Origin: Macrostomum hystrix
Taxonomy: Eukaryota > Animalia > Platyhelminthes
Direction: 5' to 3'
DNA length: 64,000 nt
NCBI GenBank assembly: GCA_950097015.1
Contig: CATNEN010000002.1
Location: 3,596,001-3,660,000 of the forward strand
The notes below the pieces were generated by a model, which was not told where the DNA came from, did not search any database, and saw nothing but the letters and a program-made list of their open reading frames with translations. Shown in pieces: positions 33,559 through 57,400 of the stretch. The position numbers and the translations under genes are program-made. Within the stretch, counting starts at the first letter, position 1. Each line of letters starts with the position of its first letter.

Positions 33559-34875
33559 ATGAAGCTGCTACTGCTTACCCTGTTGGCACTGAGCGCGGCT
33601 GCCGGGAACCACGCGGGCCGCACCGATGTCATTGTTAGGACAGAGGAAGCTGACCTGGACGCCTTGTCTGTTCCCTTCAACCGGGATCTGGAGATTGCCA
33701 AGGCTTCACTCGAGGCCGTGAAGGAGTTTGTCGAGCTCTTCAATTCCGATCTTTTTGAAAAGTCTGGCGTCAAGGAAATAGCCGAGGTTGTTTCGAAGGT
33801 GTTCACCTTTATCACCTCCATCATCGACCTCATCCAGGGTGTCCAGGGTGGAGAGTCGGCCGAGATGAAGTTCCTTCGCGAGCAGTTCGCCCAGGTGCAT
33901 GCCAAGCTCGACAGCATTGCTCTGCAGCTCGATGACGTGAAGAGGCTGATCGAGTGGCGAACCACTCGAGTGATTTACGCCAACTACGAGACCTTCATCA
34001 TCGCCGCGAGCTCCATCCTCAACAACTACGTGGCAGCGCCGGAGACCTCTCGGGAGGTGCTGAAGCGTCAGTTCCTGGCTGCATTCCAGCACAACCCTCT
34101 GGCTCCTCTGCACCTGTACCAAGCGATCGTTGAGAAGGACTTTGTGATCTCTGAGAACCTCGGTGCTGCAGTGGTTCACTACACCCAGAACCACAGGCGG
34201 CACACGATCAACTTCCTGCTGGCCATGCAGCGCCTGATTATGAGGGGTGCCCAGCTGGAGATCGCCTACGAGAAAATGGTTCACGGAGATGCTGCCGGAA
34301 ACGTAGCCAAGACCGTCTGGGACGGCCGCATGCAGAGGTTGCTCACGCGCATGCAGCAGCTGGAGGCCGATGTGAAGAACAAGTACCACACCCAGATGAG
34401 TTCCGACATTGATCGCGTCATCCTTGACAACAGGCACCTTAGCAACCAGGACTTCTCCGGTCATATGTACCGCTTCCTCGCTGATAAGTTCGACCATCGT
34501 TACTGGATCTCTCTGGCTTACCAGGATGTGAGCGGAGGCGACAGGCACTGGGTGTCCTACTGCGGCGGTGATATTCGCTTCAGGACCCACGGAAGCCGCA
34601 ATGTCGTTCTGGCCAGCGCTGACCCGAAGACAACTCGCTTCACCCAGGCTCGGGGCAACGCCGCTCTTGACGCCGCTCAGCGCGAGGGCTCTGGAGCCCA
34701 CGCCGAGTCGTGGACGAATCTGATTCGCTCCAAGATCGGCAACAGTTGCTCCGACGCCGCGTTCGTCGGCTCGATCTGCTGGGGCTGCAACGTGTGGTTC
34801 ACCATGCGCGGAGACCGCTACGTCTACAGGAAGATGAGCAACCGCGGCGACATCAACACCATCATCTTCGGTTAA
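33559..34875 (+). CDS. Secreted ~438-aa coiled-coil protein (paralog 3)
   Basis: ATG at 33559 (MKLLLLTLLALSAAAG signal peptide). Middle region near-identical to paralog 1. Confidence 0.9.
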   Translation: MKLLLLTLLALSAAAGNHAGRTDVIVRTEEADLDALSVPFNRDLEIAKASLEAVKEFVELFNSDLFEKSGVKEIAEVVSKVFTFITSIIDLIQGVQGGESAEMKFLREQFAQVHAKLDSIALQLDDVKRLIEWRTTRVIYANYETFIIAASSILNNYVAAPETSREVLKRQFLAAFQHNPLAPLHLYQAIVEKDFVISENLGAAVVHYTQNHRRHTINFLLAMQRLIMRGAQLEIAYEKMVHGDAAGNVAKTVWDGRMQRLLTRMQQLEADVKNKYHTQMSSDIDRVILDNRHLSNQDFSGHMYRFLADKFDHRYWISLAYQDVSGGDRHWVSYCGGDIRFRTHGSRNVVLASADPKTTRFTQARGNAALDAAQREGSGAHAESWTNLIRSKIGNSCSDAAFVGSICWGCNVWFTMRGDRYVYRKMSNRGDINTIIFG

Positions 34876-35459
34876 GCGGCAATAGCTTCTATTTTCATTG
34901 TGGTTGTGGATCTGGTTGGCATTGTTCGTGGTTCATAGATTTTCGCGTAAATAAAACCTTGCATTCACAGTAATGCCCTAGGTTAATTAAAGGCGTGCGC
35001 AATTAAAATGCCTTTTTTTGCTAATGCAGTATTCGTTTTTGATTGTGAATCAAGCTAGGCGCGGTATTTTAGTTTAGTTTTGACAACTTTTTTCTAACTG
35101 AACATTGATGGAGCTCGATACGGAGCAGTTTAACTTGATCAACCTGAGCAGTTTCAGCAGTGCCACACTTCAGGTGTTCTCATCAGAGGAAAATTTCTAA
35201 TGAAAATTATAGCATATTTTAAAACTAAAAAATCTGCTCCAAGACTGACGATTGGTAATAATTTTCCTTTCGTTTAGTCAGACACTGCTCTGTAGGGCCG
35301 TTATTCTTTCAGCTGCGTGAAATGTTTAACAATTCATGAAGCAATCTCAAGGAATTATCACCGACGATTATTCGCTGAATGCGTAGTCTTTACTTTTGGC
35401 ATTTCCATCAAAGTCAGCGATGGCTCGTACAATTATATTTAATATTTGACAATGTTACG

Positions 35460-36914: not shown

Positions 36915-39900
36915 TTATTCAACTGGTGGCAGAGTTGGACCACGCTGTCCGCGCCTTGGACGGTTAAGCTTCGGTCGCGTCTCGTCTAGAACGTCGGCCT
37001 TGTCGCCGGGTGGCTTCGACCGTGCCGGCGCTCCGACTGTTGCTGCTTCACTAGGAGATTGGATGACTGGGGGACCTGGATTCAACAAGGGATCGCGAGA
37101 GGTGAGGTGAGAGGTCCACGTCTATTCGGTAAAATTAATTTTTAGAAATTCGACGCTCTAATATTGAGTGTATTTGAGTGTAATATTGATTTTTAATCAG
37201 ACCTGCTTGTGGGGTGACTCCCGACTGCTCAAGTCTCTCCAGCAGCGCAGCCGGAGTGTCATCTGAAGTCGGAGGCGGCGTTGGCAGATCGTCAACCGAA
37301 CTGACACCGGCTAGGAGAGCATCGTCCAGCGGCAGATGGATGCTCTCCTCTGACATTTGCGACACGATTTCGGCGTCATCCGAATCGTCATCTTGAGATT
37401 TCTGAATTATTAATGTGAAAAAAAACAGAACAGTGCGGACGTTAGAGTGGTCGCTATGGTCAATAAGCTTCACTCGTCGCTATGACCAATGTATCCATTA
37501 GTTTAGGGGGTCGGTAGCGGAGCGTTTGAATTTCGCACAAAGGTCCCTGAGCTCGATTCCGCGAGGCCAAATTTATTCGGGGCGCTTGGGGAGAAGGCTT
37601 GGGGGGCTTGTCGTGCAATTTACGAGATTGAGGGCCAACCTCCAAGGCACAGTGAGAGTGTACACTGCCTGACGACGAAAAATTCTGGGTAGATGTACAC
37701 ACCTGTGTGAGCGTGTGCGTGCGTACAGTATCTGAGTGCGGGTGCGGGTCCACTGTCTCCAAATGATGTACCATCGCCCGCAGCCCTACTGTAATTATTT
37801 TTATTATTAACCATTGGTTTCGCTGACTCCTGTGACTTCATCCTCGACTGTCGTTTCTCTTCTAAACTTGTAGGCGGCCGCGAAGCCTGTTGCGTTTGAA
37901 TTTCTTTCTCTGCAGACTCCGCGGTTGTCATGTGAGCTGTCTCCAAGGCCACAGAGGCTTCTGTGGTCGATGACAGCTCAGTCTCAGCGATGACAGCTGT
38001 TGGCTTTGAACCAGTGTCTCCAGAATCACCCGCGCCCTTGCTGCTTGATCGTCGCGTTGGCTTTGAACGCATCAAATTGGTGAGAGCTGATGTCGGTCGT
38101 TCCTTGCTCACGGCCTGAAAACAAAGGTTGCGTTTTTAGGGATTGTTTTAGGAAGAATAGTTCCAATCTCTATTGAGCACTACACATATACGAACGTACC
38201 TGGATGACAGTCTTGAGCAGCTTCGGTGTCGGCTCCCTCTCCTTGATGACCTCCTCGACGGGGACGCTCTTCTTCTCGGTCTTGGTCGCCTTGCCCTTCG
38301 TCAAAGTCTTCTTCGCTCGCTTCCTCAGCAGCGCGTAGGCCTGCGGATAGTCCTGCATGGCCTCTTCAAAGTCCGCCTTTGACAGCGTGAACAGCGTCGC
38401 GAAGCCCTTGGACCGGACGTCCGCCGTTCTACGGTTCCCACCGGAGAGGCTCATGAGTGAGATCTCGCCGAACACCGAGCCCTCCTTCAGTGTGACGAAC
38501 ACGATGCTGTTGTTTGGGCCGCCAACCACCTCCACCTGGCCGTTCATGATGATGTACATCTCCATGCCGACCTCGCCCTGAAATTAGTGGGCATTTAGTT
38601 TGCTTTAAGAATAGTTAGACGTTAACAGTAGGACTGCAAATTATTTTGCCGCCCAATTTTATACCGTTGGGAGAGAATTTCTTCCCCCCCCCAGAAAATA
38701 TTTTGCCAGCGCCTAATTAACAACGTTTGGTGGTGACTGATTGGTTGACAAGACTAGACGATGGTGTACTGTGGTTGAGCTGCACTTAATATTTTGGCTT
38801 GATCAGTGAAATTGGAGAAATTCGCGTCCATAGTGGCCTAGTTCCACCTGCTGTAGCCCTTGAAGGTCCAGCAGTCCGTCTAGATAAAGGTTGATGACCA
38901 CAGAAGATGGAGATGATGAAGGCATATTCGGGTGACATGCTGACAAATTTTAAAGGACTTGCAAGGCCGCACTGAGGCACAGTGCTAATTCGTGAATAGG
39001 GGAATATGAAACACACCAGCGCATATGGTAAAAATCTGACCTTCGGCCAGAACCGTTGCATATCTCGACAGTCTAAAGAGCTGGCGACTTGATTATTATT
39101 TCAGAAGATGCGCAACAAAAAGTTGGCCCGTGTTCTTGAGTTTCGTGTGCGTGCGTTGCTCTGTTTGGGTGCAGCAAAAATAACTGCCCCCCTTTGTTGT
39201 TCTAATTGTTCTACTGTTAAAAAGCTACCGTTTCGATAGTTTATTTACCGTAACTTTGTAAGGTAAGATTACACACCTTTCTACAGATGTAATCACCAGG
39301 TAAGTAGAGCACAGGCTTCAGCTTCAATATGAGGTCCGAGAGCAAAGCTCGTTCACAGTCCTGCATGACAATAGGGCTTGCTTGCTTAAGATACTTCGTA
39401 GCTTAAAGATTGATAATATGGCTTAGCAACAACAGCGATAATAATATTATTATTAATAATGATAATTCGTCCGCCGTTCTATTAATAGGGAGCCTAGTCG
39501 TTAGTGCGTCAGACTCACGACTTGAACGTCGGGGGTTCGATTCCAGACTCCATTGGGACAATTTTGTGTCCTTTAGAAAGACACTTAACTCTGCGTTGCT
39601 TCAGTTCACCCAGCTGTTAAATGGGCACCAACATCAGCTGGGATAATTGAAGGTGGGTGTGGCGTCCCCACAGGACTGAACAGCCTTCAGATGCGCCGCG
39701 CAATAGCTGCGGCTGTGCTGTCGGCTGCACATCTGGCTTAATCGGGGCAGGTTTAATGAATAATAATCAAAAAAATTATTACATAATAATAGCGAGTGGG
39801 GACAATTTGACGCGTGAAAATTCCTCTGAACCTGGACCGCAAACACGAAGTCGTAAATTGGCTCTAATATCCTCACCTTGGGTGCTGGCCCTCACGGCAA

Positions 39901-42900
39901 CCCCCCAAGCCTTCTCTCCGCGGCTGCGCCCCAAGTGAATGTGGCTTCACCGCGGAATCGAGCTCACGGACCTCTCGAAGGGCGAGAGGCAAACGAGTCA
40001 GCCGCTCAATCACGCAGACACAGGCTTGCACGTTGTCAAGTTCGAGCTGGCTCACGAGATTCTAATTTCAAGAATTAGGAGCAAATAAGGTAGGAAGGAG
40101 TAAAAGAAAGTTACCTGAAACAATGACACCTTGCTGAGAATGGCGAAGTGCACACTGATAGCTAGATCTGTCTTAAGCTTCTTTGGCAGGCCTTCGAGAA
40201 GACTGTTCTCGTCTGTGTTTGGCGATGTTTGCGTATTGTTAGGTAATGTGACACTGCATTATGGGATTTACAAAGCAGTCTTACAGTTATTCCATTGGGC
40301 CAGGATAAACATGTTTTCTAGCTACAATATACTGTATTTATTAAATACTTTTGTCTACTAATACATAGCCTCTAATCTACATAGCCTCTAATCTACATAG
40401 CCTCTAATCTACCCAGTCTCTAATCTACATAGCCTCTAATCTACCCAGTCTCTAATCTACATAGCCTCTAATCTACCCAGTCTCTAATCTACATAGCCTC
40501 TAATCTACATAGCCTCTAATCTACCCAGTCTCTAATCTACATAGCCTCTAATCTACCCAGTCTCTAATCTACCCAGTCTGTAATCTACCCAGTCTCTAAT
40601 CTACCCAGTCTGTAATCTACCCAGTCTGTAATGTACCCAGTCTGTAATGTACCCAGTCTGTAATCTACCCAGTCTGTAATCTACCCAGTCTGTAATCTAC
40701 CCAGTCTGTAATGTACCCAGTCTGTAATCTACCCAGTCTGTAATCTACCCAGTCTGTAATCTACCCAGTCTGTAATGTACCCAGTCTCTAACCAATAATT
40801 TCAGGCATACCTAGAGTTTTCTGCTGTTCCCAGTTGTAGTCAAACCAGGTTCGAACCTTATCCAGCATATAATCTGGCACATTGAGGCTTTTCATGTACC
40901 AGGTGGTGATGTCCATTGTACTCCTGTAATTAGTCTTGTTGGCACTAGCAGCTTGAACAATTTCGCCAATCTGAAATACGATAAAATATTAAGAAATTAA
41001 TTGGTTTTTTGAAAAAAAACATTACCCTGACAATGCCGCAGTTTCACCTGTCCAATTAGCAACGCGAACACAAATATCCCAGACAGCCAGTAGCACGTCA
41101 TGAACAGGTGCTCAATGTAGTTTGTCGGCTGCGGATTGTTCCCAATGTTCGTGGCAAGAGAAGTTGCAAAGTAGAAGCAGTATACATACCTGCAGTTGTA
41201 TTGCGATATTCTATCACTTTTTCTTCACGTGATCTGTCACTCATGTGGCTAATTATCACTTGCTAGTTGATGTAATACAAACCAACAGGCGAACTGGCCT
41301 GCAAATTATCTGTCACATTGACAGCAAATCTTCATAGACATTGACAGACAAATTAAATTGACAGACACTTTGACAGACACATTGACAGACACATTTGCAG
41401 ACAAAAAACACAAATTGACAGACACTTTGACAGAAAAATTGACAGGCAAATGACAGACAGCATTGACAGACAAATTGAGAGACACATTGACATACACATT
41501 GACAGACACATTGACAGACACATTGACAGACACTTTGACAGACACATTGACAGACACATTGACAGACACATTGACAGACACATTGACAGACACATTGACA
41601 GACACTTTGACAGACACATTGACACACACATTGACAGACACATTGACATACACATTGACACACACATTGACATACACATTGACAGACACATTGACAGACA
41701 CATTGACAGACACATTGACAGACACTTTGACAGACACATTGACAGACACATTGACAGACACATTGACAGACAAATTGACAGACACTTTGACAGACACATT
41801 GACAGACACATTGACAGACACATTGACAGACACATTGACAGACACATTGACAGACACTTTGACAGACACATTGACACACACATTGACAGACACATTGACA
41901 TACACATTGACACACACATTGACATACACATTGACAGACACATTGACAGACACATTGACAGACACATTGACAGACACTTTGACAGACACATTGACAGACA
42001 CATTGACAGACACATTGACAGACACATTGACAGACACATTGACAGACACTTTGACAGACACATTGACACACACATTGACAGACACATTGACATACAAATT
42101 GACAGACAAATTGACAGACATTTTGACAGACACATTGACAGACACATTGACAGACACATTGACAGACACATTGACAGACACATTGACAGACACTTTGACA
42201 GACACATTGACACACACATTGACAGACACATTGACATACACATTGACACACACATTGACATACACATTGACAGACACATTGACAGACACATTGACAGACA
42301 CATTGACAGACACTTTGACAGACACATTGACAGACACATTGACAGACACATTGACAGACACATTGACAGACACATTGACAGACACTTTGACAGACACATT
42401 GACAGACACATTGACAGACACATTGACAGACACTTTGACAGACACATTGACAGACACATTGACAGACACATTGACATACACATTGACATACACATTGACA
42501 GACACATTGACAGACACATTGACAGACATTTTGACAGAAACATTGACAGACACATTGACAGACACATTGACATACACATTGACAGACACATTAACAGACA
42601 CATTGACAGACACTTTGACAGACACATTGACAGACACATTGACAGACACATTGACAGACACATTGACAGACAAATTGACAGAAACATTGACAGGCTAATT
42701 GACAGACACTTTGACAGACACATTGACAGACACATTGACAGACACATTGACAGACACATTGACAGACACATTGACAGACACTTTGACAGACACATTGACA
42801 CACACATTGACAGACACATTGACATACACATTGACACACACATTGACATACACATTGACAGACAAATTGACAGACATTTTGACAGACACATTGACAGACA

Positions 42901-45900
42901 CATTGACAGACACATTGACAGACACATTGACAGACACTTTGACAGACACATTGACACACACATTGACAGACACATTGACAGACACATTGACAGACACATT
43001 GACAGACACTTTGACAGAAACATTGACATACACATTGACAGACAAATTGACAGACATTTTGACAGACACATTGACAGACACATTGACAGACACATTGACA
43101 GACATTTTGACAGAAACATTGACAGACACATTGACAGACACATTGACAGACACATTGACAGACATTTTGACAGAAACATTGACAGACACATTGACAGACA
43201 CATTGACAGACACATTGACAGACACATTGACAGACACTTTGACATACACATTGACAGACACATTGACATACACATTGACAGACACATTGACATACACATT
43301 GACAGACACATTGACAGACACATTGACAGACACATTGACAGACACATTGACAGACACATTGACAGACACATTGACAGACACATTGACAGACACATTGACA
43401 GACACATTGACAGACACATTGACAGACACATTGACAGACACTTTGACAGACACATTGACAGACACATTGACAGACACATTGACAGACACATTGACAGACA
43501 CATTGACAGACACATTGACAGACACATTGACAGACACATTGACAGACACATTGACAGACACATTGACAGACACTTTGACAGACACATTGACACACACATT
43601 GACAGACACATTGACAGACACATTGACAGACACATTGACAGACACTTTGACATACACATTGACAGACACATTGACACACACATTGACAGACACATTGACA
43701 TACACATTGACAGACACATTGACAGACACTTTGACAGACACATTGACACACACATTGACAGACACATTGACATACACATTGACACACACATTGACATACA
43801 CATTGACAGACACATTGACAGACACATTGACAGACACTTTGACAGACACTTTGACAGACACATTGACAGACACATTGACAGACACATTGACAGACACATT
43901 GACAGACACATTGACAGACACTTTGACAGACACATTGACACACACATTGACAGACACATTGACATACACATTGACAGACAAATTGACAGACATTTTGACA
44001 GACACATTGACAGACACATTGACAGACACATTGACAGACATTTTGACAGAAACATTGACAGACACATTGACAGACACATTGACAGACACATTGACAGACA
44101 TTTTGACAGAAACATTGACAGACACATTGACAGACACATTGACAGACACATTGACAGACACATTGACAGACACTTTGACAGACACATTGACACACACATT
44201 GACAGACACATTGACAGACACATTGACAGACACATTGACAGACACTTTGACATACACATTGACAGACACATTGACAGACACATTGACAGACATTTTGACA
44301 GAAACATTGACATACACATTGACAGACAAATTGACAGACATTTTGACAGACACATTGACAGACACATTGACAGACACATTGACAGACATTTTGACAGAAA
44401 CATTGACAGACACATTGACAGACACATTGACAGACACATTGACAGACATTTTGACAGAAACATTGACAGACACATTGACAGACACATTGACAGACACATT
44501 GACAGACACATTGACAGACACTTTGACAGACACATTGACACACACATTGACAGACACATTGACAGACACATTGACAGACACATTGACAGACACTTTGACA
44601 TACACATTGACAGACACATTGACATACACATTGACAGACACATTGACATACACATTGACAGACACATTGACAGACACATTGACAGACACTTTGACAGACA
44701 CATTGACAGACACATTGACAGACACATTGACAGACACATTGACAGACACATTGACAGACACATTGACAGACACATTGACAGACACATTGACAGACACATT
44801 GACAGACACTTTGACAGACACATTGACAGACACATTGACAGACACATTGACAGACACATTGACAGACACATTGACAGACACATTGACAGACACATTGACA
44901 GACACATTGACAGACACATTGACAGACACATTGACAGACACTTTGACAGACACATTGACACACACATTGACAGACACATTGACAGACACATTGACAGACA
45001 CATTGACAGACACTTTGACATACACATTGACAGACACATTGACATACACATTGACAGACACATTGACATACACATTGACAGACACATTGACAGACACATT
45101 GACAGACACTTTGACAGACACATTGACAGACACATTGACAGACACATTGACATACACATTGACATACACATTGACAGACACATTGACAGACACATTGACA
45201 GACAAATTGACAGACAAATTGACAGAAACATTTGCAGACAAAAAACAAAAATTGACAGACATTTTGACAGAAACATTGACAGGCTAATTGACAGACACAT
45301 TGACATACACATTGACACACAAATTGACAGACAAATTGACAGAAACATTTGGAGACAAAAAACAAAAGTTGACAGACATTTTGACAGAAACATTGACAGG
45401 CTAATTGACAGACACATTGACAGACAAATTGACAGACATTTTGACAGAAACATTGACAGGCTAATTGACAGACATTTTGACAGAAACATTGACAGACAAA
45501 TTGACAGACACATTGACAGACAAATTGACAGACATTTTGACAGAAACATTGACAGGCTAATTGACAACTACAAACTCTTAGAAAAGTATGAAATTTATAC
45601 GGTCAAAGACGCACTCACGCAGTAACATTGGTTGCCGGATCGTAAACCCAGGTGTTGGAGCCCAAGCCCTCCCACTTGGAAACCTGATAAAAAATGCACG
45701 CTTCCACGTGGATGATGAAGATCATGTACAATATGGTGCGCACAATCCGAATCACGTGACCATTCTTGGCCATTTTGTCCAGCATGTCGAACAATTGCCA
45801 GAAGGCCTGTAACTGCAGATTGGGGGAATGAAATGCTTAGATCCCATTTGCCTGCCCCAGTGTGCTTCATAACTAATTCTGCACTAGATTAAGTCGACAA

Positions 45901-48900
45901 AAAACTTTCGATTTAGGGAGGAAAATTTCCCTTGACAATTTTGGCTCTGAAGTGTTCTCTTCTCTTAGAAGAGCAGAAATCGAAGGCAGGGATTCGCTCA
46001 GCTCTATTCTGGCTGGGTTGGCTAAAAGTGCATTCTGGGAAACTAATTTCTGCCAGACAAATTACATAGAAATTTTAAGAGGAGAGATAAAAAGCTTTGG
46101 TGGGGATAAAGAGGCCGCTGCATATGAGACTCATGACATTTCCAAGACGTACCTTCAACAGTCGTGGAAAGCGCACAATGGGCAGAATGCCGGTGGCAAA
46201 GTACAGCAGGTCGGTGGGCGCCAGGGCTGCCAGATCCAGCTTGAAGTCTGTCTTGGCCATGTAGTGCTGGCGGCATGCTTTGGGGTCTTTCTGTTCGGGT
46301 TTGGTGGGCGATTGAAATATTGCCGTCTGATCTTCTTAGAGTTGAGAGGAGAGATCGATTTAAACTAAAGAGAATTGTGGAGAGAGTGAGTGGCAGAGCG
46401 GTTAACGCGAAAGCGTGCCTCTCGCACCAAGGTCCCTGAGCTCGATTCCGCGGCGAGGCCACGAGACGCAGCCGCGGAGAGAAGGCTTGAGGGCTTGTCG
46501 TGCAATTTTAGCCCTTGAGGGCCAACGTCCAAAACGCAGTGAAAGTGTGCACTGCCTGTGACGATGAGAAAGTTGTGAGTGTGTGCCTGCGTACAGTAGC
46601 TGTGTGCGTGTGTGCTCAGGAGTCAGCGGAATGGGCAGAATTGCCTCCTGGCTGGCTGCGGATCTAGTGTCGTCATGCAGATTTGAGCAGGGGATTACTA
46701 AAAAGGCTCGAGAATTTTGGGGAGATTTTGTTATGGACACGTTATATGGCTCAAAATTTGTCCCAAAAATGCACATAATCTTCAAAGCATGAACTCCGAA
46801 TAATCCAAAACCTTGGTTCCTTAGTACATCTGTATGTAAGCATATAGAAACCTAAGTTTTACAGTTTCAAAACAGAGCCAGGCCGACTCGTATGAGCGAG
46901 ATACATTGGGACAAGCCGAGCTCTGTCTCTCAAAGGCTGACGAAGTTCTTGGATGAATGCGCTGAATTCAATTACAGATAGCTGAGGACTGGGAAAATTC
47001 GTTGGGGTAGAATTGCATGGAAACAAGGTTCATTTCTAAGAGCACAGGACTGCTAAAAAGCTTGTTGCTTGTCTTCGTTGGATAGGCCTAACGAACTTTG
47101 CTTCATATCGGCCAGTGGCAGCTGAGTTTGCGGAATTTAAATTAGAAACGAAAATGCTGCTTGTGAGAACTAAACATTAATTGATGCCACTTTCTAATCG
47201 CTTTCTGAACACCCCGCCTCACAGTTTGAACCTCAAACCGAGTCATTTTTCTACCCCTTTTAACACACACCTCACGCCTGACCCTCAACCCCAGTATTTT
47301 TTCTACCCCGTTTAACACCCACCTCACGCCTGACCCTCAACCCCAGTAACTTTTCTACCCCTTTTAACACCCACCTCACGATTGACCATCAACCCTAGTT
47401 ATTTTCCACCCGTTCAACACCCACCTCACGCCTGACCCTCAACCCCAGTATTTTTTCTACCCCGTTTAACACCTACCTCACGCCTGACCCTCAACCCCAG
47501 TAACTTTTCTACCCCTTTTAACACCCACCTCACAATGGGCCATCAACCCCAGCCTTTATTCACGCTTTATTCCAGTATTTTACCCTCTTTTAGCACCCGT
47601 CACGTGCGTTCAACCCTTGCCAGAGTTTTTTTACCTCGAGAATTCCTTGATTGACAAATCTGATTCGCATCTTGAAGAAAATGTCCAGAATGTAGATAAA
47701 ATCCGCTACATAGTCAAGGCAGAGCCAAGCCACCCTGCCAGTCGAATTCGGCTCGTCGTAAATTGTGAAAGTGGATCGAAGCGGAATAGCGAAATAGTTG
47801 TAAGCCATCGCGACAGTCAGTAGACAGAGCCAAAGAAGGTACGTAGTGCCTGTGTTAGTGTTTCAGTTTCAGGATTTAGGATTAAGCGCAATGTTCAAGA
47901 CTTAAAGAAGCTCTCATGGTACGAGCTACCAAGAATTTAGGCAGAGAGGTTGGTTTTGGGTGTTTTGAATTTGATGGTGGGTTGAAGTGTGAATAATGGG
48001 GCGGTGGGTTAAAGTGTCGAGAATGGGGTGGTGGTTAGTTGAAGTGTCGAGAATGGGGTGGTGGGTTGAAGTGTGAATAATGGGGCGGTGGGTTGAAGTG
48101 TGAATAATGGGGCTGGGGGTTGAAGTGTCTAGAATTGGGGTGGTGGGTTGAAGTGTCTAGAATGGGGTGGTGGTTGTTGGAAGTGTCGAAAAAGAGGTGG
48201 TGGGTTGAAGTGTGAATAAAGGGGCGGTGGGTTGAAGTGTCGAGAATGGGGTGGTGGGTTGAAGTGTCGAGAATGGGGTGGTGGGTTGAAGTGTGAATAA
48301 AGGGGCGGTGGGTTGAAGTGTCGAGAATGGGGTGGTAGGTATTAGTATCAATAATTTCGTACAGAAGCGTTATATAGCTGTAAGTGAAGAGCGTGGTTGG
48401 CATGGCTTCGCTAGATTTATTTGGTAATTTTTTTCTGACAAATATTCAAATCCACGCTTGTTTGAGTCATCCAGTTCATGCGTACTCGAAGCTAGCTTAG
48501 AACCATTGCATGATTTACTTTTCCCATGTTTTCTATATACTCGTATTTTTCTCTCCCGAAACTTTTCTGACGAAGTTTTGCTACAGATTTTTGTCTGTCG
48601 CATTCGAATCGTTCCAGCGTGCAATTATGCGATGAGTAAGTAGTATTTAGATCAGAGTTAAGATGCTACTGCTCACGGTGTCATCAATATTAAGCAATGT
48701 ATCACAATGTCAAGAAGGCAAATCACGACATCTCAGTGGAAGGAAGCAATGAAAAATGTGTTTGATACTGCGAGTTAGTCATCAAGCACAGATTTACAAA
48801 AAAGACAAACGTGCAAATAGTGAGCAGCTTAAGACACACCTTGCGGATCGACCGTACTGGGCCAGCGCACAGCCGGCAGACTGATTGTCCAACGGCAAAG

Positions 48901-51545
48901 GCGACACTCGCGCCGCTTGACAGCCTCACCCGAAGCTCCGTCAGCTTCATCAGCGTCGTGTACCAGATCTTCCAGGTGCTGCTGCTGCTGTTTATTTTGC
49001 TCCGTCTTGGTTTCTGCAAGAAAGGTTTGAGAAAGAATTTCAGATGATTTCAAAGCAGTTATTGCGCGACTCTTCCAAAAGCTCCGTACAAATGTTCAGT
49101 CCATGGACTGTAGAGGCCACCTCAGCCATTCGATGTTCTGAATCAAATTATTTAAACAAGTGAGCTGACGGTGAGCAACTTGAATTGATTCAAGTGTCTC
49201 CCTTTTGCTGAGAATTAAACTCTCGTTCAGAACTGAACATGAGCAGCTCAAACCACTGTACTTTAAGCTCCACAAGAAGAATCCGCCATACGGGAACTCG
49301 GCAACAAAAACAGTTTCCACTGGGGGCTGAAACTGTTCTGAAATCGCTAGAAGTGTCTTTACCAGTGACCGACGATTCATCCTCGGACTCTGATTCTGTC
49401 AACGGTTGGACTGTGCTAGCGCGCAGGCTGCTGGCGCGGGTTTCAAAGCGACGCCGAAGCTGCCGAAGGCGTTCGCTCATGGCTTCGCTCAGTACGGAGG
49501 AAGAGCGGCGGCTGTTGTATCGTTGGTCATCGATGGAATGGAGCGGAGAAGTCAGGTTGCAGAGAGAATTGCTTTTTAGTGTGAAGGAATATAAATTAAA
49601 GGATTAAAATTCAGGGGAGCCACAGGATAATGACTAAAATCCAGCGAGGAGGCAATTCTGCTCATTTTGCTGACTCCTAAGCACAGACACACACAGATCT
49701 GTACGCAGCTACACAATCACACAGGTGTGACAATCTGCCCTGACTTTTTCATCTTGGAGGTTGATCCTCCAGGGCGTAAATTGCAGACGTCCTCGGGTCC
49801 TTGTCGTGAAAGGAAAGGTTGGGCCTGTGTCTTGTACTCATCCAGCTTTTGTTACCTTAAGTAGCTCATATTAATATTTGTAATACGCATTTATGAGTTG
49901 TTGTTACGTCATCGCGAATGCTCACATTTCAGGAATTGTCAGCGAGCTTCCACTGACGCTGGACATTTCAATGTCTCCTCCGGAGGCGGCCGATTTTTTC
50001 TCGAAGATTTTGCTCGCTCTAGTCTCGCTGGCATCCTCAAGGCCGCGATCCACTTCTGTAAAACAGAATTAAACTATGAAATCGATCAGATATTTTTGCT
50101 TGCGTCAGAGACACCGATTGTGGATGATTTTCCCTAACTTATTTTTACCATACTCAATGTAGGAGCTCCAGGTGGTTCTCGAATCTGACGAAAATCCCCC
50201 TTCATCAAGCATCTGTCCTATGTAGTTTGAGACCAACGGGCTGTCGGCCTTCACTGACGATCGAATCAAAGGTCTTCGGCCGGTCGTTCCTCCACTGCTG
50301 CCAGCATCGGTTGACGTGAGTAGTCGTCTCACAATGCGACGCTGAAAATTAGCCTGCAGCTTGTGCAGGTAGATGTCATAGTCCTCAATACTTGCCGAGT
50401 CGAAGCTCAACTGGCTAAGGCTACGAGTCGTGGCGCTGCGTCTTGGACGGGGGTGTCGGTTGCCCATGGCTTGCCGGGTTTTGAGTCTGTGCTCAACAGT
50501 CGCTTCATTTTAAAAAAAGTTTTCCGTTTTTGTTTCCGGAAAGGAGCTTCTTGCTCTGGATTGGCCTTCGAAATTGGCCACTCACAGCCTTCTGAAGTCT
50601 CTGGTGCGTTTCCGTACATCTTTTCGCCATAAGAGCAGTTTTCTCTACGTTTATTACTTTTAGTAGTATTGATGAAATTAAGCTGCGCGGAACTCGTAGC
50701 AAATAACGCTAATGTTATCCGGTCACTTTCTAAACAGTAGAAGAATCCGCTCCGCTCCAGTTGCTTTTTAGCAACTCCTGAGTCTGAGTCTCCTGAGTCT
50801 GCATATCAACGTACCTGCCAAGCCTGTCATCAGCAGAACAACCTTGGCTCCTAGCTTACCATAAATAAAAAAAATAATGGCAGGAGGGCTGCAGACACTG
50901 ACACATCATTTGGTGACGCTACACCCAGCCAGCGCTGAATCCTGAGCACACAGATACCGCACACAGGTGTCACAAGACGTGTACATCTGCCCTGACTTTC
51001 TCATCGTCAGGCATTGTGCACTCTCACTGTGCCTTGGAGGTTGGCCTTTAAGGGCGTAAATTGCACGACAAGCACCCAAGCCCACAAGCCTTCTCTCCGC
51101 GGCTGCGCCCCAATTAAATGTGGCCTCGCCGCGGAATCGAACTTACGTACCTTGGTGCGAGAGGCAAACGCATTAACCGCTGTGCCACCAACCCCCCACT
51201 AGGCTCGACCTTATTTCATCCCCTCTCTGTCGTCACTACAGTGCCGCCACTGAATCGGTCGAACATCTTTTCAACAGTCCGAATTTGGTGCAGACCTGAG
51301 TGCACCAACTGCTGATAGAACTGCACTACGCACTATTTTTTGACAAAAACTATCGCCATTTAAGTCCAAAGGGAACTTCACCGGAACCCCAAAGTCCAGC
51401 TCACCTCGTGGCACAGCTAGGCTAGAGCCCGCTGGCTTGTCACCGCTCATCACAATGGGCGAAGCCTCTTGGACTGGTTCAACCGATGGAGCTTCGTCCA
51501 CGACGAGAATAGGAGGATTTCTGGCAGCTTGCTCCGGCAGCGATA

Positions 51546-51579
<34 letters not shown>

Positions 51580-51622
51580 CTGCTGCTGCTGCTGTTGCTG
51601 CTGCTGCTGTTGCTTCTGCTGC

Positions 51623-51711
<89 letters not shown>

Positions 51712-51915
51712 CTTCTGCTGAGCCGGCATCGGTGGAGGGCTGGTGATTTCCAGCTCTTCAACCGTGAAGCCTAGGTTAGCGATTCCCAATTGATAATTGT
51801 CTGCGTCATCGGTGCGAAGGCTTTCAATAGACTGGCGGAGATTGCCAGACGAGCTGGTCTGCGCCTCTGTCGCAGTCTGCAGCTGCTGTCTCTGCTGCTG
51901 GCCTTTTCCGGGCAT
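36915..51915 (-). CDS. Cyclic-nucleotide-gated channel beta-like subunit (TAX-2/CNGB type), copy A
   Basis: Core exons 47849-47635 (S1-S2), 46290-46153, 45812-45619, 41189-41048 (pore SLATNIGNNPQP), 40970-40811, 40212-40115, 39360-39277 and 38577-38200 (CNBD, FGEISL...NRRTAD), all phase-consistent. N-terminal polyQ exon near 51915-51330 and C-terminal exons ending at TAA 36915-36917. Terminal exon boundaries are approximate. Confidence 0.88.
37505..37810 (+). mobile_element. SINE family 1 in a CNG-A intron
   Basis: ggtccctgagctcgattccgcgaggcc, gagagtgtacactgcctgacgacg, ending cagccctactgtaattatt. Confidence 0.7.
39490..39690 (+). mobile_element. tRNA-derived SINE family 2 with CORE-like domain
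   Basis: B box ggggttcgattcc followed by gtgtcctttagaaagacacttaactctgcgttgcttcagttcacccagctgttaaatggg, which parallels the MIR/CORE consensus as recalled. Confidence 0.6.
39880..40025 (-). mobile_element. SINE family 1, 5' part
   Basis: caagccttctctccgcggctgcgccccaagtgaatgtggcttcaccgcggaatcgagctc. Confidence 0.7.
40365..40792 (+). repeat. 16-bp satellite grading from ATAGCCTCTAATCTAC to CCAGTCTGTAAT(C/G)TAC
   Basis: Period 16 with a visible variant gradient across the array. Confidence 0.9.
41330..45565 (+). repeat. 12-bp satellite (CATTGACAGACA)n, ~4.2 kb, in a CNG-A intron
   Basis: About 350 units with recurring variants (ctttgacagaca, cattgacataca, ttttgacagaaa). It produces the spurious 300-1400-aa ORFs. 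Confidence 0.97.
46384..46690 (+). mobile_element. SINE family 1, near full length
   Basis: A box gtgagtggcagagcggttaacgc, B-box-like gagctcgattcc, complete body. Confidence 0.8.
47235..47550 (+). repeat. ~52-bp tandem repeat, ~6 copies
   Basis: accctcaacc recurs at 47281 and 47333. Confidence 0.85.
47985..48340 (+). repeat. ~27-bp tandem repeat (GGGTTGAAGTGTCGAGAATGGGGTGGT and variant)
   Basis: Two alternating variants visible. Confidence 0.85.
49615..49800 (-). mobile_element. SINE family 1, 3' part
   Basis: ccagcgaggaggcaattctgctcattttgctgactcctaagcac. Confidence 0.6.
50870..51200 (-). mobile_element. SINE family 1, near full length
   Basis: Head and body blocks present, ends gcaggagggctgc next to an A/T-rich tail. 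Confidence 0.75.
51546..51721 (-). repeat. Coding (CAG/CAA)n polyglutamine tract, ~58 codons, in the CNG-A N-terminal exon
   Basis: In frame with [12 protein letters not shown], which is homologous to [12 protein letters not shown] in copy B. Confidence 0.8.
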
Positions 51916-52074
51916 TGCGTGTTTTCTAGATCGGAAAATTGCGCAATATTTTCGTGCAGGCAGCCAATGTTAGTTAATGTCAAAGCAGTTTTAAACCAAT
52001 CAATAAATCGGCAAAGCTATTCAATCTATAAATATTTCCATACTGAAAAAATATTCCGATTAGACACGGAAAAT

Positions 52075-52400
52075 GTGAGACAGGGAAGAGATGAGAAATT
52101 TGAGAGATGACACAGGTAAGAGATGAGACAGGGGAGAGAAGAGACAGGGAGAGATGAGACATGGGAGAGATGAGACGGGAGAGATGAGACGGGAGAGATA
52201 AGACATGGGAGAGATGAGACGGGAGAGATGAGACGGGAGAGATGAGACATGGGAGAGATGAGACATGGGAGAGATGAGACGGGAGAGATAAGACATGGGA
52301 GAGATGAGACATGGGAAAGATAAGACACTGGAGAGAAGAGAGAGAAGAGAGATGAGACGGGAGAGGTGAGAAATGGGAGAGATGAGTCATGGGAGAGTTG
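52075..52400 (-). repeat. 14/16-bp satellite (GAGATGAGAC[AT]GGGA), reverse complement of the 28280-28550 family
   Basis: Direct inspection. Confidence 0.85.
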
Positions 52401-54274
52401 AGACAGGTTGCCACCACATTAAAAATTATGAGTGTTGCTTGGATTGCTTGGGTGTGCCTTCCTTAAGTCTCTTCGCGTATTTCGATCAACTCGCGCCTCT
52501 CATTTTCTAATGAAAAAACTAATCCACTTAGCTACTAGTGCGACTACTAATCCACTTATTCACCGAAGTAAACGAAAAGAAACTCTAAAAATATACCGGA
52601 AAAAATACTTGGGTTCACTGTTACCTGAACCTTACCTGAGCCGATGAACAAGCGATGAGTTGCAGGATTTAAAAACTAAATGAATATCGAAGCAATCTTC
52701 AAATGGCGGCGACTTCAAAGGAGCTGTCTATTCGAGAAAATGTAGCGGCACAAGAACCGGTTCAAAGTAGAAATCTCCAACGAGAGTTATAAATGTAGTC
52801 CCAGTTTTTCTTGTCTCGACGATGAGAAATGGGATGGGGAAGACATGCCGGGGAGGTTGAGCTCGAGAAGGCGTTTCGTGAGCGTGCACTTTGAGCAATG
52901 CAAAAAGGCAGGGAAGAAATTTTTCAGATTGAAAGGCCGCAAGGAGACGGCGAGTAAGTAAGAGAAGGAAGACAGAGAGAGCTGAGCATGGTCGGATCAG
53001 GGCGAGCTTACTGCCGGGGGTAAGGATGTGCAGGTGACAGAAATTTTTCACGGCGTCTTTCACTTCCATTTCCTCTCTTCTCCCTTCGTTCCCGTTTCTC
53101 CCATCCAGAGCTGGCCTCATCCGGCTTGAATCCGGCTTTAAGGGAATTTATCCTGTGTGCGGGAAATCAACCAACAAACTAAAATCCCCTTGGACAGCAA
53201 AAACAGCCCCGCTAGCAACCGACGGACCGGAGCCAATTAGCCAGGCTGCTCAGTGCTCAGAATTTGCTCATTGTAATCGTATACCATACAATCCAGTATT
53301 TTTGCATTTTCTCAATTTTTAGCTCTCCTTTTGTTTTGCAGTTAATGGTCACGTCAAGCTTCTCATCATCACTACTGCTATAATTACAGATCACGATTTG
53401 ACTCTCTCAAGGTTGGCTGTTTCGAAGAAACGACCATTAAAAGAATGATGATGAACATTGAGCATTGCGGTTTCTTGTTTTACTGAGTAGTTGCTAGTTG
53501 TTTCACTTCCAGGAAAATGGAAACTCATCCATCAATTCATCCCCAATTAAGGTTTGCAGGTTGGTAGCTAGAGCTCCAGAATTATGACCAATGACCAATG
53601 GATTTCGAGTGTCAGCCTACCCCAGTCAAAGGACTAAACAGCTAATACAGAGTCTTTGATGATTCAGCACGCGCTTCATCGACGCGGGAAAGTGAGCAAT
53701 CGTGTCCTTGTCCCTGTCCTCTGGGGGATATTGAACACGCTGCTGGTACAGGAAGCTTTCAGCTTGCTCCAATGCGTGTTTTTTTTCCACACAAACGCAA
53801 TTTATTTGCTATGATCGCGTTCATATGATCAACTAGTATACTCAAAAAGTTACAACACAAAAGCTTTTTATGATTTATTGAAATAGAAATAGTACTTTTA
53901 TGTTTATAGAAATACAAAGACAGGCTTGATTCTTGAAATACTTAGTCGTGTCGTGCCGTGTGTATGTAGTTTTATTTCTATTCTAGAGCAGATAAGGGCA
54001 GTGCAAAAATTACACTCATTTTCTTTATTTTCTACATTATTTTCAATGAGTAACAAACTGTTCATGAGGTGTCGAAACAAGTCCAAATATCTATTCAACG
54101 CGCGGTAGAGTAGACTCTCGCTTCTCATTCCTCAAGGACACGTTTTTAGTGGTCTCATCTAGAATAGAGATGCTGTGTGATGGTCCTTGCTTTCTTGTTG
54201 TGCCTGTAAATACAATTAGTATGCATGACAATTTTACTTTTGGTAGCTTTGACCCGATTGTCGTCCAATGTATG

Positions 54275-54450
54275 CCCTAGAGGACCAACCTCCAAGGCAC
54301 AGTGAGAGTGTACACTGCCTGCCAATGAGAAAGTCGGGACAGATGTACACACCTGTGCAAGCGTGTGCTCGGGAGTCAGCGGAACGGGCAGAATTGCCTC
54401 CTCGATGGCTGCAGGTCTAGTGTCACCAAAATGGTGTACATTTGCCCTCA
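54275..54450 (+). mobile_element. SINE family 1, 3' part
   Basis: ccaacctccaaggcacagtgagagtgtacactgcc...gagtcagcggaacgggcagaattgcctcctcg. Confidence 0.75.
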
Positions 54451-54499
54451 CCGGACAGAACTGAATCTGTCCGGTAAGCTTCGTGAACATATTTTTATT

Positions 54500-57400
54500 A
54501 GAAGAAAGACTGAGAGGTTCTAACATGTGATGATCGACAATGAACACACCTTTCGACTCTTTCATTTGCTGCAGCTTCTCGAGCAGTGCTCCGGGTGTGT
54601 CATCCGAGCTCGGAGGCGGTGTCGGAGCCTCTCGAGTGCCTTCCGTTTCAGCCGGCAAGTGGATGCTCTCCTCCGACATTAGCGAGTCGTCATCGTCGTG
54701 ATTTTCAACCTTTGAGTTGAGTTGATTTAATGACTTGCCAGTTCGTAAAACGAAAATAAAACTAATAACAAATTGCAAGATATGTTAGCCGCAAGTCTTA
54801 CAATAGCCTTGGTCTTCGAGAACCAATGTATCCCCGTATTTGACATTTTCGAATTTTTCGACTCCGATGCCGGCGTTGTGAGCGACGCTGCAGCTGCTCT
54901 CGCCGCCACAGCAGACGCGGTGGCAGTCATCATTTCCGAGCCTCGCCGAGATTTCGACGACTTTTGAATGAACTTTGTGAGCGCCGATGTAGGCCTTTCC
55001 TTACTGACAGCCTGTAGGAAAGAATCACCTTCAAGCTGTCCATGTGCTCAAGTTGAGGCGGTGCACCATTAAACAATAATAGTAAAAGCTTCAGTGACAA
55101 GTCTAACTTCAAATACTAGATCTTGCCAATATCTTCTTTGGGTGTGAGTGGCAGATTGGTCTAACGCGTTCACCTCTAGCGCCAAGGTCCCTGAGCTCGA
55201 TTCCGCGGCGAGGCCACATTCCTTTGGGGCGCATCCGCAGAGAGAAGGCTTGGGGGCTTGTCATGCAATTACTTAAGAGCCCTGAGGGCCAACCTCCAAG
55301 GCACAGTGAAAGTGTACACTGCCTGACGGTGAGAAGGTCAGGACAGATGTACGCACCTGTGTGAGCGTGTTCTCAGGAGCCTGAAGGTCTCTGAAGGTCC
55401 TTGGGCACTCTATGGGCGCGTCCTTTGGCGATAGACGACCCGCAACCAGCGCAGCGAGGAGGCAATTCTGCCAATTTCGCTGACAGCTGAGCACGTGCTC
55501 ACATTTGTGTATGCACGTAAGCGACGTACCTGGATGACGGTCTTGAGCAGCTTCGGTGTCGGCTCCCTCTCCTTGATGACCTCCTCGACGGGGACGCTCT
55601 TCTTCTCGGTCTTGGTCGCCTTGCCCTTCGTCAAAGTCTTCTTCGCTCGCTTCCTCAGCAGCGCGTAGGCCTGCGGATAGTCCTGCATGGCCTCTTCAAA
55701 GTCCGCCTTTGACAGCGTGAACAGCGTCGCGAAGCCCTTGGACCGGACGTCCGCCGTTCTACGGTTCCCACCGGAGAGGCTCATGAGTGAGATCTCGCCG
55801 AACACCGAGCCCTCCTTCAGTGTGACGAACACGATGCTGTTGTTTGGGCCGCCAACCACCTCCACCTGGCCGTTCATGATGATGTACATCTCCATGCCGA
55901 CCTCGCCCTGTTGAGATTTCAGAAATTTTGCACGCATTGTCAATCCAGGTTAGTGAGGCCTCTTATCTGCCAGTCATGATGGGATTTACCTAAAATAATA
56001 TAATATTTATAATTTGCTTGAGGACTGTGCGCAATGGTGCATCGTTTGGTGACAGTAGACCCGAAGCCAGCGAGGAGGCAATTCTGCCCGTTCTGCTGAC
56101 TCCTGAACACTGTGTCTCAGAGGTTGTCCCTCAAACGAACGATAACGAATTAACCGCTCTACCACGCACCCCCTATAAGCATTTACCAATCTAAGTGAGT
56201 GAAGTTGCTGTCTCACCTTTTTGCAAATATAATCGCCGGGAAGGTACAGCACCGGTTTGAGTTTTAAAATCAGGTCGGATAGTAAGGCTCTCTCGCAGTC
56301 CTTAAATTGTGTGAAAAATCTGAGCATCATTGGCATTGTCTAATTAATTCTTAATTTTATTATTTCTATGAAAATCTACTGACCTGAAACAATGACACTT
56401 TGCTCAATATGGCGAAGTGCACATTGATTGCTAAATCTGTCTTGAGCTTCTTTGGAAGGCCTTCGAGTAGGCTCGTTTCGTCTGCGAATTGTTGAAGATT
56501 GTTCGCTAGTGGCGGCATCGAGATTCACCGAACTCGAAGTGGCTGGCGACTTACCGAGAGTTTTCTGCTGCGTCCAGTTGTAGTCAAACCAGGTGCGCAC
56601 CTTCTCAATCATGTAGTCTGGCACATTGAGGCTCTTCATGTAGAGCATTGTGGCGTCCATCTGAGCCCGGTAGATAGTCTTGTTGGCGCTGGCAGCTTGG
56701 ACAATTTCGCTGATCTGGAAGAAGGTGCGCAAGTGGATGGCTTTATCGAAAAATTCGACACATCGTCAGGCTGTGAAAGACGGTATTCGAAGTAATAAAA
56801 AAAGTGACAAAACTTCCTCTGCTCTTTTACTACTTTGCCCGTGCTTTTGACTGTGGTGACCCTTAAATGGGCCGTTTTTAGCCTCTCATCTTTGCATATG
56901 CGTATGTTTGACTGGGATTCGGGCGGGGGGAAGCAATACAGTCGATAAAAGCTGTGCTTGTGTCACGTGGAGTGGTCCAGTTCGACTACAGCAATTTTTT
57001 GCTTAACTGCAAAGCAAAATTCTTACCTGTCCGATGAGTAGGGCAAAAACGAACACGCCAGCCAGCCAGTAGCTAACCATAAAGGCCTGCTCGAGCACAT
57101 TGTTCGGCTTGGGATTATTCCCCACTGAACCAGCGGTCTTTGTAGCAAAGTAGAAGCAGTAGATGTAGCTGCGGGATGTGGACAGTCGCTGTAAACTCTT
57201 CAGAGACTTCAAAGAAAATGAAAACCTGTCTCGGTCTCGACACTTACGCTGTGACATTCCACCGGACGTCGAACACCCAGTCGTTGATGCCGAAGCCTTC
57301 CCAGCGAGATACGACATAATAGAAGCAGGCCTCCAGGTGGATTATGTACATCATGTAGATGAGGGTTCGGGCGATCCGCACGGCGTGACCATTCTTGGCT

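What the first reader, a model, noticed from the sequence alone, without database searches (positions are those of the whole stretch)
38200..55907. Exon-precise homogenisation of the cyclic-nucleotide-binding exon between otherwise diverged paralogs
The CNBD exon of copy A (38200-38577) and copy B (55530-55907) differ at only one position I could find in 378 nt (38209 a versus 55539 g). Identity stops within a few nucleotides of the splice sites. The adjacent 84-nt exon encodes 27/28 identical residues yet differs at most third positions (GAC TGT GAA CGA GCT TTG versus GAC TGC GAG AGA GCC TTA). So a recent conversion copied the ligand-binding exon only. That could come from homology limited to the exon or a cDNA template, and would keep ligand sensing uniform while pore and termini diverge (inference).
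Basis: partly seen in the sequence, partly recalled or inferred. Interest (0 to 1): 0.75.

Follow-up and report, generated by a model that had tools for sequence, protein, structure and literature searches.

The report
Gene-converted exon in flatworm channel paralogs
Two neighbouring, anciently duplicated ion-channel genes of the flatworm Macrostomum hystrix share a letter-identical copy of the exon that binds cyclic nucleotides, because that exon was recently copied from one gene to the other; this is a clean example of interlocus gene conversion, a well-known process.

Summary
Two tandem minus-strand CNGB/TAX-2-like channel genes lie 17.3 kb apart (copy A about 37225-51891, copy B about 54566-63672). 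They share a 387-nt block, the 378-nt CNBD exon plus 3+6 splice-site bases, that is 386/387 identical. The one difference is synonymous (ACT/ACC). The eight other well-bounded exon pairs are 67-86 % identical with saturated dS, and introns are unalignable. The adjacent 84-nt exon is 27/28 identical in protein but about random at third positions. The 220-Mb assembly holds only these two copies.

Macrostomum lignano has separate orthologs of A and B, so the duplication predates the species split. In the CNBD exon, protein site patterns flip from orthology to species grouping, so the homogenisation is younger than the split.

Best explanation: interlocus gene conversion confined to the only exon long enough (378 nt against 215 nt or less) to offer recombination homology between introns that share none.

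A cDNA template is neither needed nor supported. The idea that conversion keeps ligand sensing uniform is weak, because the binding core is protein-identical in the M. lignano paralogs too.

This is a known kind of event, and earlier notes of this scan report it at other loci of this genome. Interest is low to moderate.

The parts
38200..38577 (-). Copy A, 378-nt CNBD exon (beta-roll, phosphate-binding cassette, B/C helices and post-CNBD linker); the homogenised tract
   Evidence: PF00027 E=1e-12. 377/378 identical to copy B with dS 0.011. Canonical cag|...|gtacgt boundaries.
55530..55907 (-). Copy B, 378-nt CNBD exon; the homogenised tract
   Evidence: Same as for copy A. Interspersed-repeat fragments lie 18 nt downstream (55415-55511) and 86 nt upstream (55993-56110).
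38194..38580 (-). Full identity block in A (exon plus 3-nt acceptor and 6-nt donor); outer limit of the tract
   Evidence: BLAST 99.74 % over 387 nt; flanks unalignable.
55524..55910 (-). Full identity block in B
39277..39360 (-). Copy A, 84-nt exon (start of the CNBD); not converted. B counterpart 56217-56300
   Evidence: 27/28 aa identical, 61/84 nt identical, longest identical run 5 nt.
37932..38114 (-). Copy A, exon after the CNBD exon, only 85 nt downstream; not converted. B counterpart 54826-55011 lies 518 nt downstream
   Evidence: The first 12 residues are identical in protein but differ at silent sites, and the rest is about 33 % identical. This bounds the tract tightly on the 3' side.
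40115..49511 (-). Copy A, seven upstream exons: preS1 49363-49511, S1-S2 47635-47849, S3-S4a 46153-46290, S4b-S5 45619-45812, pore-S6 41048-41189, C-linker 40811-40970 and 40115-40212
   Evidence: All have AG/GT boundaries and are 67-86 % nt identical to B, with longest identical runs of 11-21 nt. dS is 0.8 to saturation.
56384..61599 (-). Copy B, seven upstream exons: 61445-61599, 59695-59909, 57639-57776, 57248-57441, 57027-57168, 56555-56714, 56384-56481
   Evidence: Orthologous to M. lignano P0376.
37225..37401 (-). Copy A C-terminal exon block (B counterpart 54566-54712); diverged
   Evidence: About 63 % aa identity with indels.
51721..51891 (-). Copy A N-terminal block (B counterpart 63502-63672); diverged
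   Evidence: 33 % aa identity around one conserved short motif.

Best explanation
This is interlocus (non-allelic) gene conversion between two tandem, same-strand, anciently duplicated CNGB/TAX-2-like channel genes of Macrostomum hystrix, 17.3 kb apart. A break in or beside the CNBD exon of one copy was repaired from the paralogous exon of the other copy. The copied tract is at least 378 nt and at most about 387 nt. It ends at the exon edges because the flanking introns share no homology that a heteroduplex could extend into. This exon was affected because it is by far the longest block of conserved sequence (378 nt against 84-215 nt for the others). It is the only one clearly above the roughly 200-bp homology that efficient conversion needs. 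Shown: near-identity at silent sites against saturated neighbours, only two copies in the genome, the duplication older than the split from M. lignano, and homogenisation younger than that split. Inferred: the repair mechanism; copy A as the more likely donor (4 informative residues against 2); and that this event is the latest in a series rather than a single one.
For: A 386/387 identity block is bounded by unalignable introns. dS is 0.011 against 0.8 to saturation in 11 other exon blocks, and the third-position P value is about 1e-36. The genome holds only two copies, so there is no third donor. M. lignano P0287 is the ortholog of A and P0376 of B; for the S4b-S5 exon, P0287 is 62/65 to A and 42/65 to B, and P0376 is 43/65 to A and 55/65 to B. 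Protein site patterns give 33 orthology and 0 species sites in six other exons, against 0 and 2 in this exon (Fisher p=0.0017). The M. lignano paralogs differ at 7 of 13 residues (95-107) where the M. hystrix copies are identical. This is the longest exon, and the other exons now share perfect runs of only 5-21 nt. Conversion mainly occurs above about 80 % identity, and its minimal efficient processing segment is about 200 bp (PMC3924818). Tracts of a few hundred bp are typical (10.1101/135152). GC3 is 0.88 against 0.60 and 0.67 in the rest of the two genes, as expected for GC-biased conversion.
Against: There is no read-level confirmation, and the assembly was Pilon-polished with short reads (PMC10468722), which could erase a few true differences inside the block. 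The GC3 excess is not specific. One distant, unconverted CNG gene shows a similar excess in this exon (0.75 against 0.55) and others have high GC3 throughout. The species-grouping evidence rests on two amino-acid sites, and no M. lignano DNA could be obtained. If the exon had been as diverged as its neighbours before the event, conversion would have been very inefficient, so earlier rounds must be assumed.
Confidence: 0.85

Rival explanations
1. The conversion was a one-off event between exons that had already diverged like their neighbours, rather than the latest of recurrent homogenisations. This is a variant of the best explanation about timing.
For: In M. lignano residues 95-107 differ strongly between the paralogs, so homogenisation has not been continuous over the whole exon in every lineage. 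The GC3 signal is not specific.
Against: At 70-85 % identity with perfect runs of at most 21 nt, conversion is strongly disfavoured (PMC3924818). A single tract covering the exon from first to last base would also be a coincidence. M. lignano A and B are protein-identical over 113 of the exon's 126 residues.
Confidence: 0.3
2. The repair was templated by a transcript or cDNA: a spliced mRNA or its reverse transcript from one paralog served as donor, which would make the tract exon-precise.
For: Identity ends at the splice sites. Earlier notes of this scan report exon-limited tracts at other loci of the genome (unchecked).
Against: The adjacent exons, contiguous in a cDNA, are unconverted, and both introns are retained. 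Identity includes donor positions +3 to +6 ('acgt'), which are absent from a spliced template. None of the 8 other exon pairs matches 4/4 there, though chance P is 0.08. Lack of intron homology alone explains the exon precision.
Confidence: 0.05
3. The near-identity is an assembly or polishing artefact: one locus really carries a different exon and consensus building made the two alike.
For: The assembly was made with canu from PacBio reads, haplotig-purged and polished with Arrow and Pilon. Short reads lying wholly inside the block would map to both copies.
Against: Reads from a 25-30 % diverged exon would not cross-map. A 387-nt block between kilobases of unique intron is spanned by any long read. 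One difference survives. Both copies sit in intact gene models with canonical splice sites. The assembly has no third or haplotig copy.
Confidence: 0.04
4. Nucleotide-level purifying selection, for example on an RNA structure, an embedded RNA gene or extreme codon bias, has kept the exon identical since the duplication without any conversion.
For: The exon has high GC3.
Against: There is no excess RNA structure (z = -0.05) and no Rfam match in the exon. The equally constrained 84-nt exon is random at third positions. The poorly conserved linker (residues 95-107) is also identical, although it differs between the M. lignano paralogs. An ordinary CNG paralog pair in this genome is 85 % identical in this exon.
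Confidence: 0.01

Closest known systems
Interlocus (non-allelic) gene conversion between tandem paralogs, as reviewed in PMC3924818 and measured in 10.1101/135152
   Same: A short tract of a few hundred bp is near-identical at silent sites inside otherwise diverged duplicates. The copies are nearby and on the same strand. The process depends on homology length and identity, and the tract is GC-rich.
   Different: The paralogs are very old (dS saturated, duplication older than a deep split within the genus), so the tract is a lone island that coincides with one exon. Most described cases involve younger duplicates in which introns are converted too.
Homogenisation of the ligand-binding exon in paired immune receptors (CEACAM N-domain exon, PMC2832619 and PMC7042247; Siglec-11/16, PMC5701461; KLRC/NKG2, PMC3210942)
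   Same: Conversion is confined to the exon or exons encoding the ligand-binding domain, while the signalling and other parts of the paralogs stay diverged.
   Different: In those receptors the binding domain evolves fast, and conversion plausibly keeps the partners in step. Here the binding core is under such strong purifying selection that it is protein-identical anyway, including in the M. lignano paralogs. No comparable selective rationale is shown.
CNG channel beta-type subunits (vertebrate CNGB1/CNGB3, nematode TAX-2)
   Same: The nearest named relatives of both genes are annotated CNGB1, CNGB3 or TAX-2. Their M. lignano orthologs carry Ion_trans plus cNMP_binding domains.
   Different: This is a lineage-specific duplicate pair in Macrostomum. 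No function has been tested and no conversion has been reported for this family.
Other exon-limited conversion cases noted by this scan in the same genome (GABA-B-like receptors, SORD, a channel pore exon, VPS4)
   Same: The same pattern of single long exons homogenised between old neighbouring paralogs (AI notes that I did not re-test).
   Different: Different gene families. At the channel locus noted earlier the pore exon was homogenised, whereas here the pore exon is among the most diverged (68 % nt identity) and the ligand-binding exon is homogenised.

Membership tests
Interlocus gene conversion | A tract with far lower divergence than the flanking paralogous sequence, beyond chance | tested here: met
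   386/387 identity against 67-86 % in other exons and unalignable introns. Third-position P is about 1e-36.
Interlocus gene conversion | Identity extends to silent sites, so protein-level selection cannot explain it | tested here: met
   dS 0.011 against 0.8 to saturation. The 84-nt exon with 96 % aa identity has 26 % third-position identity.
Interlocus gene conversion | Phylogenetic incongruence: the tract groups paralogs by species while the flanks group them by orthology | tested here: met
   At protein level only: 33 orthology and 0 species sites in six other exons, against 0 and 2 in this exon, p=0.0017. The nucleotide-level test was not possible.
Interlocus gene conversion | Both loci verified independently of the assembly (reads spanning unique flanks) | not testable with these tools
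   No read data were available. The assembly method is given in PMC10468722.
GC-biased gene conversion history | GC3 raised in the converted tract relative to the unconverted parts, and more so than in unconverted homologs | tested here: inconclusive
   GC3 is 0.88 against 0.60 and 0.67. Distant CNG genes show differences of +0.20, +0.10, -0.11 and +0.03 for the same exon.
cDNA or retro-mediated conversion | Co-conversion of adjacent exons and/or precise intron loss | tested here: not met
   The neighbouring exons are unconverted, and introns of 699/309 nt and 85/518 nt are retained.
CNG channel, beta-type subunit | Cyclic nucleotide-binding domain (PF00027) C-terminal to a six-TM pore domain (PF00520) | tested here: met
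   PF00027 E=1e-12 on the exon, with Ion_trans hits on two TM exons below the curated cut-off. The orthologs P0287 and P0376 carry PF00520 plus PF00027.
CNG channel, beta-type subunit | Nearest characterised relatives are beta (CNGB1/3, TAX-2) rather than alpha subunits | tested here: met
   The top named hits are CNGB1, CNGB3 or TAX-2 from molluscs, nemerteans, flatworms and nematodes. The other CNG genes of this genome are at most 49 % identical in this exon.
CNG channel, beta-type subunit | Modulatory subunit that needs an alpha partner (function) | not testable with these tools
   Requires expression and electrophysiology.

The most novel reading that the evidence does not exclude
Exon-limited homogenisation may be unusually pervasive among old paralogs of Macrostomum hystrix; this scan has now noted several unrelated loci. 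It might reflect a lineage-specific property of repair, such as a very high interlocus conversion rate, short-homology tolerance or transcript-templated repair, rather than the ordinary background process.
Probability: 0.07. Interest if true: 0.65.

Novelty: new member of a known kind. Interest (0 to 1): 0.3.

Why it matters
The value is mostly practical. It is a very clean, tightly bounded conversion island (378-387 nt) in paralogs older than a deep split within Macrostomum. Domain or whole-gene trees of these channels would therefore be misleading unless built exon by exon. It also illustrates how exon length and intron turnover decide which part of an old duplicate can still be homogenised. 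Biologically, the two beta-type subunits share an identical ligand-binding domain and post-CNBD linker but have different pores and termini. Conversion is not needed to explain the identical binding core. Together with the other cases noted in this genome, it suggests that a genome-wide survey of interlocus conversion in Macrostomum would be worthwhile. I found none in the searchable literature.

Tried and rejected
1. GC-biased conversion as proof of a long conversion history. The within-gene GC3 contrast is strong, but controls on four distant CNG genes of the same genome show it is not specific. I kept it only as suggestive.
2. A second case in the CNG genes on contigs C11 and C37. Their CNBD exons looked alike in protein but are 85 % identical in DNA, against 65-81 % elsewhere. 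This is ordinary conservation, and I used it as a comparator.
3. RNA structure or an embedded RNA as the cause of identity. Fold z-score is -0.05 and the exon has no Rfam hit. The one sub-threshold hit (isrG, 51516-51747) lies over the CAG/poly-Gln stretch of copy A's N-terminal exon and is probably a low-complexity artefact.
4. A third donor copy: none in the assembly.
5. Independent assemblies or close relatives found through the exon peptide: nothing above about 73 % identity in the 69-220 aa length class or among the 50 % representatives. Macrostomum lignano orthologs were reached only through a bridge query.
7. Donor-site identity as evidence against a cDNA template: 4/4 positions match, but chance P is 0.08, which is not decisive.
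Nothing in the window looked human.
Full report
**What is there**

The window is G000:C2:3596001-3660000 of a 220,453,370-base assembly in 42 contigs. These figures match the published Macrostomum hystrix assembly: about 220 Mb, 42 contigs, inbred line SR1, canu on PacBio reads, Purge Haplotigs, then Arrow and Pilon polishing (PMC10468722). Earlier notes of this scan name the same species. My own searches fit this. The nearest proteins are flatworm and other spiralian CNGB-like channels, and single exons are up to 95 % identical to Macrostomum lignano proteins.

Self-comparison in DNA and in translated minus-strand frames shows two tandem genes on the minus strand. Copy A spans about 37225-51891 and copy B about 54566-63672. 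They share 12 collinear homologous coding blocks. For nine exon pairs I fixed the boundaries. All have canonical AG/GT sites, and all have equal lengths in the two copies except the first pair (149 against 155 nt). Intron lengths differ widely between the copies, for example 4429 against 79 nt and 699 against 309 nt. The introns do not align apart from copies of an interspersed repeat.

**Check of the observation**

The 378-nt exon (A 38200-38577, B 55530-55907) is 377/378 identical. Identity continues only over the 3-nt acceptor and the 6-nt donor, giving a 387-nt block (38194-38580 / 55524-55910) with 386 matches. The one difference (38209 A against 55539 G on the + strand) is the third base of codon 123, ACT against ACC, and is synonymous.

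The exon encodes profile positions 14-89 of the 89-position cNMP_binding domain (E=1e-12). That covers the beta-roll, the phosphate-binding cassette and the C-terminal helices, followed by about 40 residues of linker.

Everything else is old:
- The other eight well-bounded exon pairs are 67-86 % identical in DNA, with longest perfect runs of 5-21 nt.
- dS of the 11 other homologous blocks is 0.8 to saturation, against 0.011 for this exon.
- On the 3' side, copy A's next exon starts only 85 nt away. Its first 12 residues match copy B in protein but differ at silent sites, which bounds the tract tightly.
- The chance of at least 125/126 matching third positions at the background rate of 0.50 is about 1e-36.

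The assembly holds just these two copies. The next CNG genes are at most 49 % identical in this exon, so no third donor exists.

**Rivals to conversion**

Selection on the RNA or DNA sequence fails:
- The exon folds no better than shuffled controls (z = -0.05).
- It has no Rfam match.
- The equally constrained 84-nt exon is free to vary at silent sites.
- An ordinary pair of CNG genes in this genome (contigs C11 and C37) is 85 % identical in this exon, against 65-81 % elsewhere.

An assembly artefact is unlikely. A 387-nt block between kilobases of unique intron is spanned by any long read, and reads from a 25-30 % diverged exon would not cross-map during polishing. Short-read polishing could have removed a few true differences inside the block, so 1/378 may be a slight underestimate. 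I could not check reads.

**Evidence from a related species**

I used a Schistosoma hit as a bridge query restricted to its CNBD, then the M. lignano hit itself as query. This gave two M. lignano proteins.
- P0287 is the ortholog of copy A. Its S4b-S5 exon is 62/65 identical to A and 42/65 to B, and its pore exon 44/47 to A and 30/47 to B.
- P0376 is the ortholog of copy B. The same exons give 43/65 to A and 55/65 to B, and 33/47 to A and 44/47 to B.

The duplication therefore predates the M. hystrix / M. lignano split. Across six other exons, 33 amino-acid sites support orthology grouping and none supports species grouping. In the CNBD exon the counts are 0 and 2 (residue 85 R against K, residue 106 P against Q). 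Fisher p = 0.0017.

The two M. lignano paralogs differ at 7 residues, all within positions 95-107 of the exon, where the M. hystrix copies are identical. So M. hystrix homogenised this patch after the split. The shared M. hystrix sequence is A-like at four of these residues (95, 98, 100, 101) and B-like at two (103, 104). Copy A is the more likely donor, or more than one event contributed; this is inference.

Whether M. lignano also homogenises the exon at silent sites remains open.

**Mechanism**

The best explanation is interlocus gene conversion between same-strand copies 17.3 kb apart. The tract is limited to the exon because the introns offer no homology.

The reason it is this exon is probably length. 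At 378 nt it is by far the longest conserved exon (the others are 84-215 nt). It is the only one well above the roughly 200-bp minimal efficient processing segment. Conversion also drops sharply below about 80 % identity (PMC3924818), and tracts of a few hundred bp are typical (10.1101/135152).

If the exon had been as diverged as its neighbours, conversion would have been very inefficient. I therefore think earlier rounds kept it similar, so this event would be the last of a series. That is inferred, not shown.

The GC3 of the exon (0.88 against 0.60 and 0.67 in the rest of A and B; Fisher 3e-10 and 8e-7) fits GC-biased conversion. The control is not clean, however. Across four distant CNG genes the same exon differs from the rest of its gene by +0.20, +0.10, -0.11 and +0.03.

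'A recent conversion copied the ligand-binding exon only' holds. 'Homology limited to the exon' is the sufficient explanation.

A cDNA template is not needed. The neighbouring exons are unconverted, the introns are retained, and identity includes four intron bases of the donor site. None of the 8 other exon pairs matches 4/4 there, though chance P is 0.08. For a single exon a cDNA template cannot be excluded.

'Keeping ligand sensing uniform' is weak. The binding core is protein-identical in the M. lignano paralogs as well, so purifying selection alone is enough. The visible protein effect of conversion in M. hystrix is confined to the 13-residue linker patch.

**Comparison with what is known**

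Conversion confined to the ligand-binding exon is well described for paired immune receptors: CEACAM (PMC2832619, PMC7042247), Siglec-11/16 (PMC5701461) and KLRC (PMC3210942). I found no report for CNG channels or for Macrostomum.

Earlier notes of this scan describe the same pattern at other loci of this genome: GABA-B-like receptors, SORD, a channel pore exon and VPS4. I did not re-test them and do not count them as support. They do mean that the scan found this kind of thing before on other DNA of this genome.

**Procedural notes**

Nothing in the window looked human.

**Verdict**

This is a new member of a known kind, with interest 0.3.

Noticed in passing
window 41357-45566 and 60280-61435: There are large intronic minisatellites in both channel genes. 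A 12-nt unit repeated about 352 times fills almost the whole 4429-nt intron between the S4b-S5 and pore exons of copy A. A 6-nt-based array (reported with periods 24 and 30, about 1.16 kb) sits in a different intron of copy B, between the preS1 and S1-S2 exons. The two arrays are only about 62 % alike.
   Followed up: partly
window, e.g. 8134-8356, 16164-16509, 37522-37808, 46386-46671, 50864-51196, 55139-55383, 59299-59593, 63100-63393: An interspersed repeat of about 200-330 nt has at least 15 copies in the window, in both orientations, mostly in introns. Fragments lie 18 nt downstream (55415-55511) and 86 nt upstream (55993-56110) of copy B's converted exon. A break from such an element could have started the repair, but that is speculation.
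   Followed up: no
window 3342-6820: This is a complex tandem array. A 2070-nt unit is repeated at 99.2 % identity (3435-5504 against 4751-6820), with internal shorter-period repeats.
   Followed up: no
window 29447-30634, 31475-32563, 33689-34876: Three copies of a segment of about 1.1-1.2 kb. Two are direct at 94 % identity and one is inverted at about 84 %. They overlap the toxin-like coiled-coil cluster noted by another reader.
   Followed up: no
L010+L014 (G000:C11:3885000-3904999) and L011+L015 (G000:C37:2618000-2637999): A second pair of CNG channel genes lies on different contigs. Their CNBD exon is 85 % identical in DNA, the C-linker 81 % and the TM region 65 %. This is ordinary graded conservation, not conversion, and I used it as a comparator.
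   Followed up: yes
window 51516-51747 (+): A sub-threshold Rfam hit to the bacterial sRNA isrG (41 bits against a gathering score of 100). It lies over the CAG/poly-Gln stretch of copy A's N-terminal exon and is probably a low-complexity artefact.
   Followed up: partly
P0287, P0458, P0459 (M. lignano proteins): The public M. lignano models look imperfect. P0287 carries about 38 extra residues between the two C-linker exons, which looks like a retained intron. P0458 and P0459 lack 4 residues inside the CNBD beta-roll.
   Followed up: no
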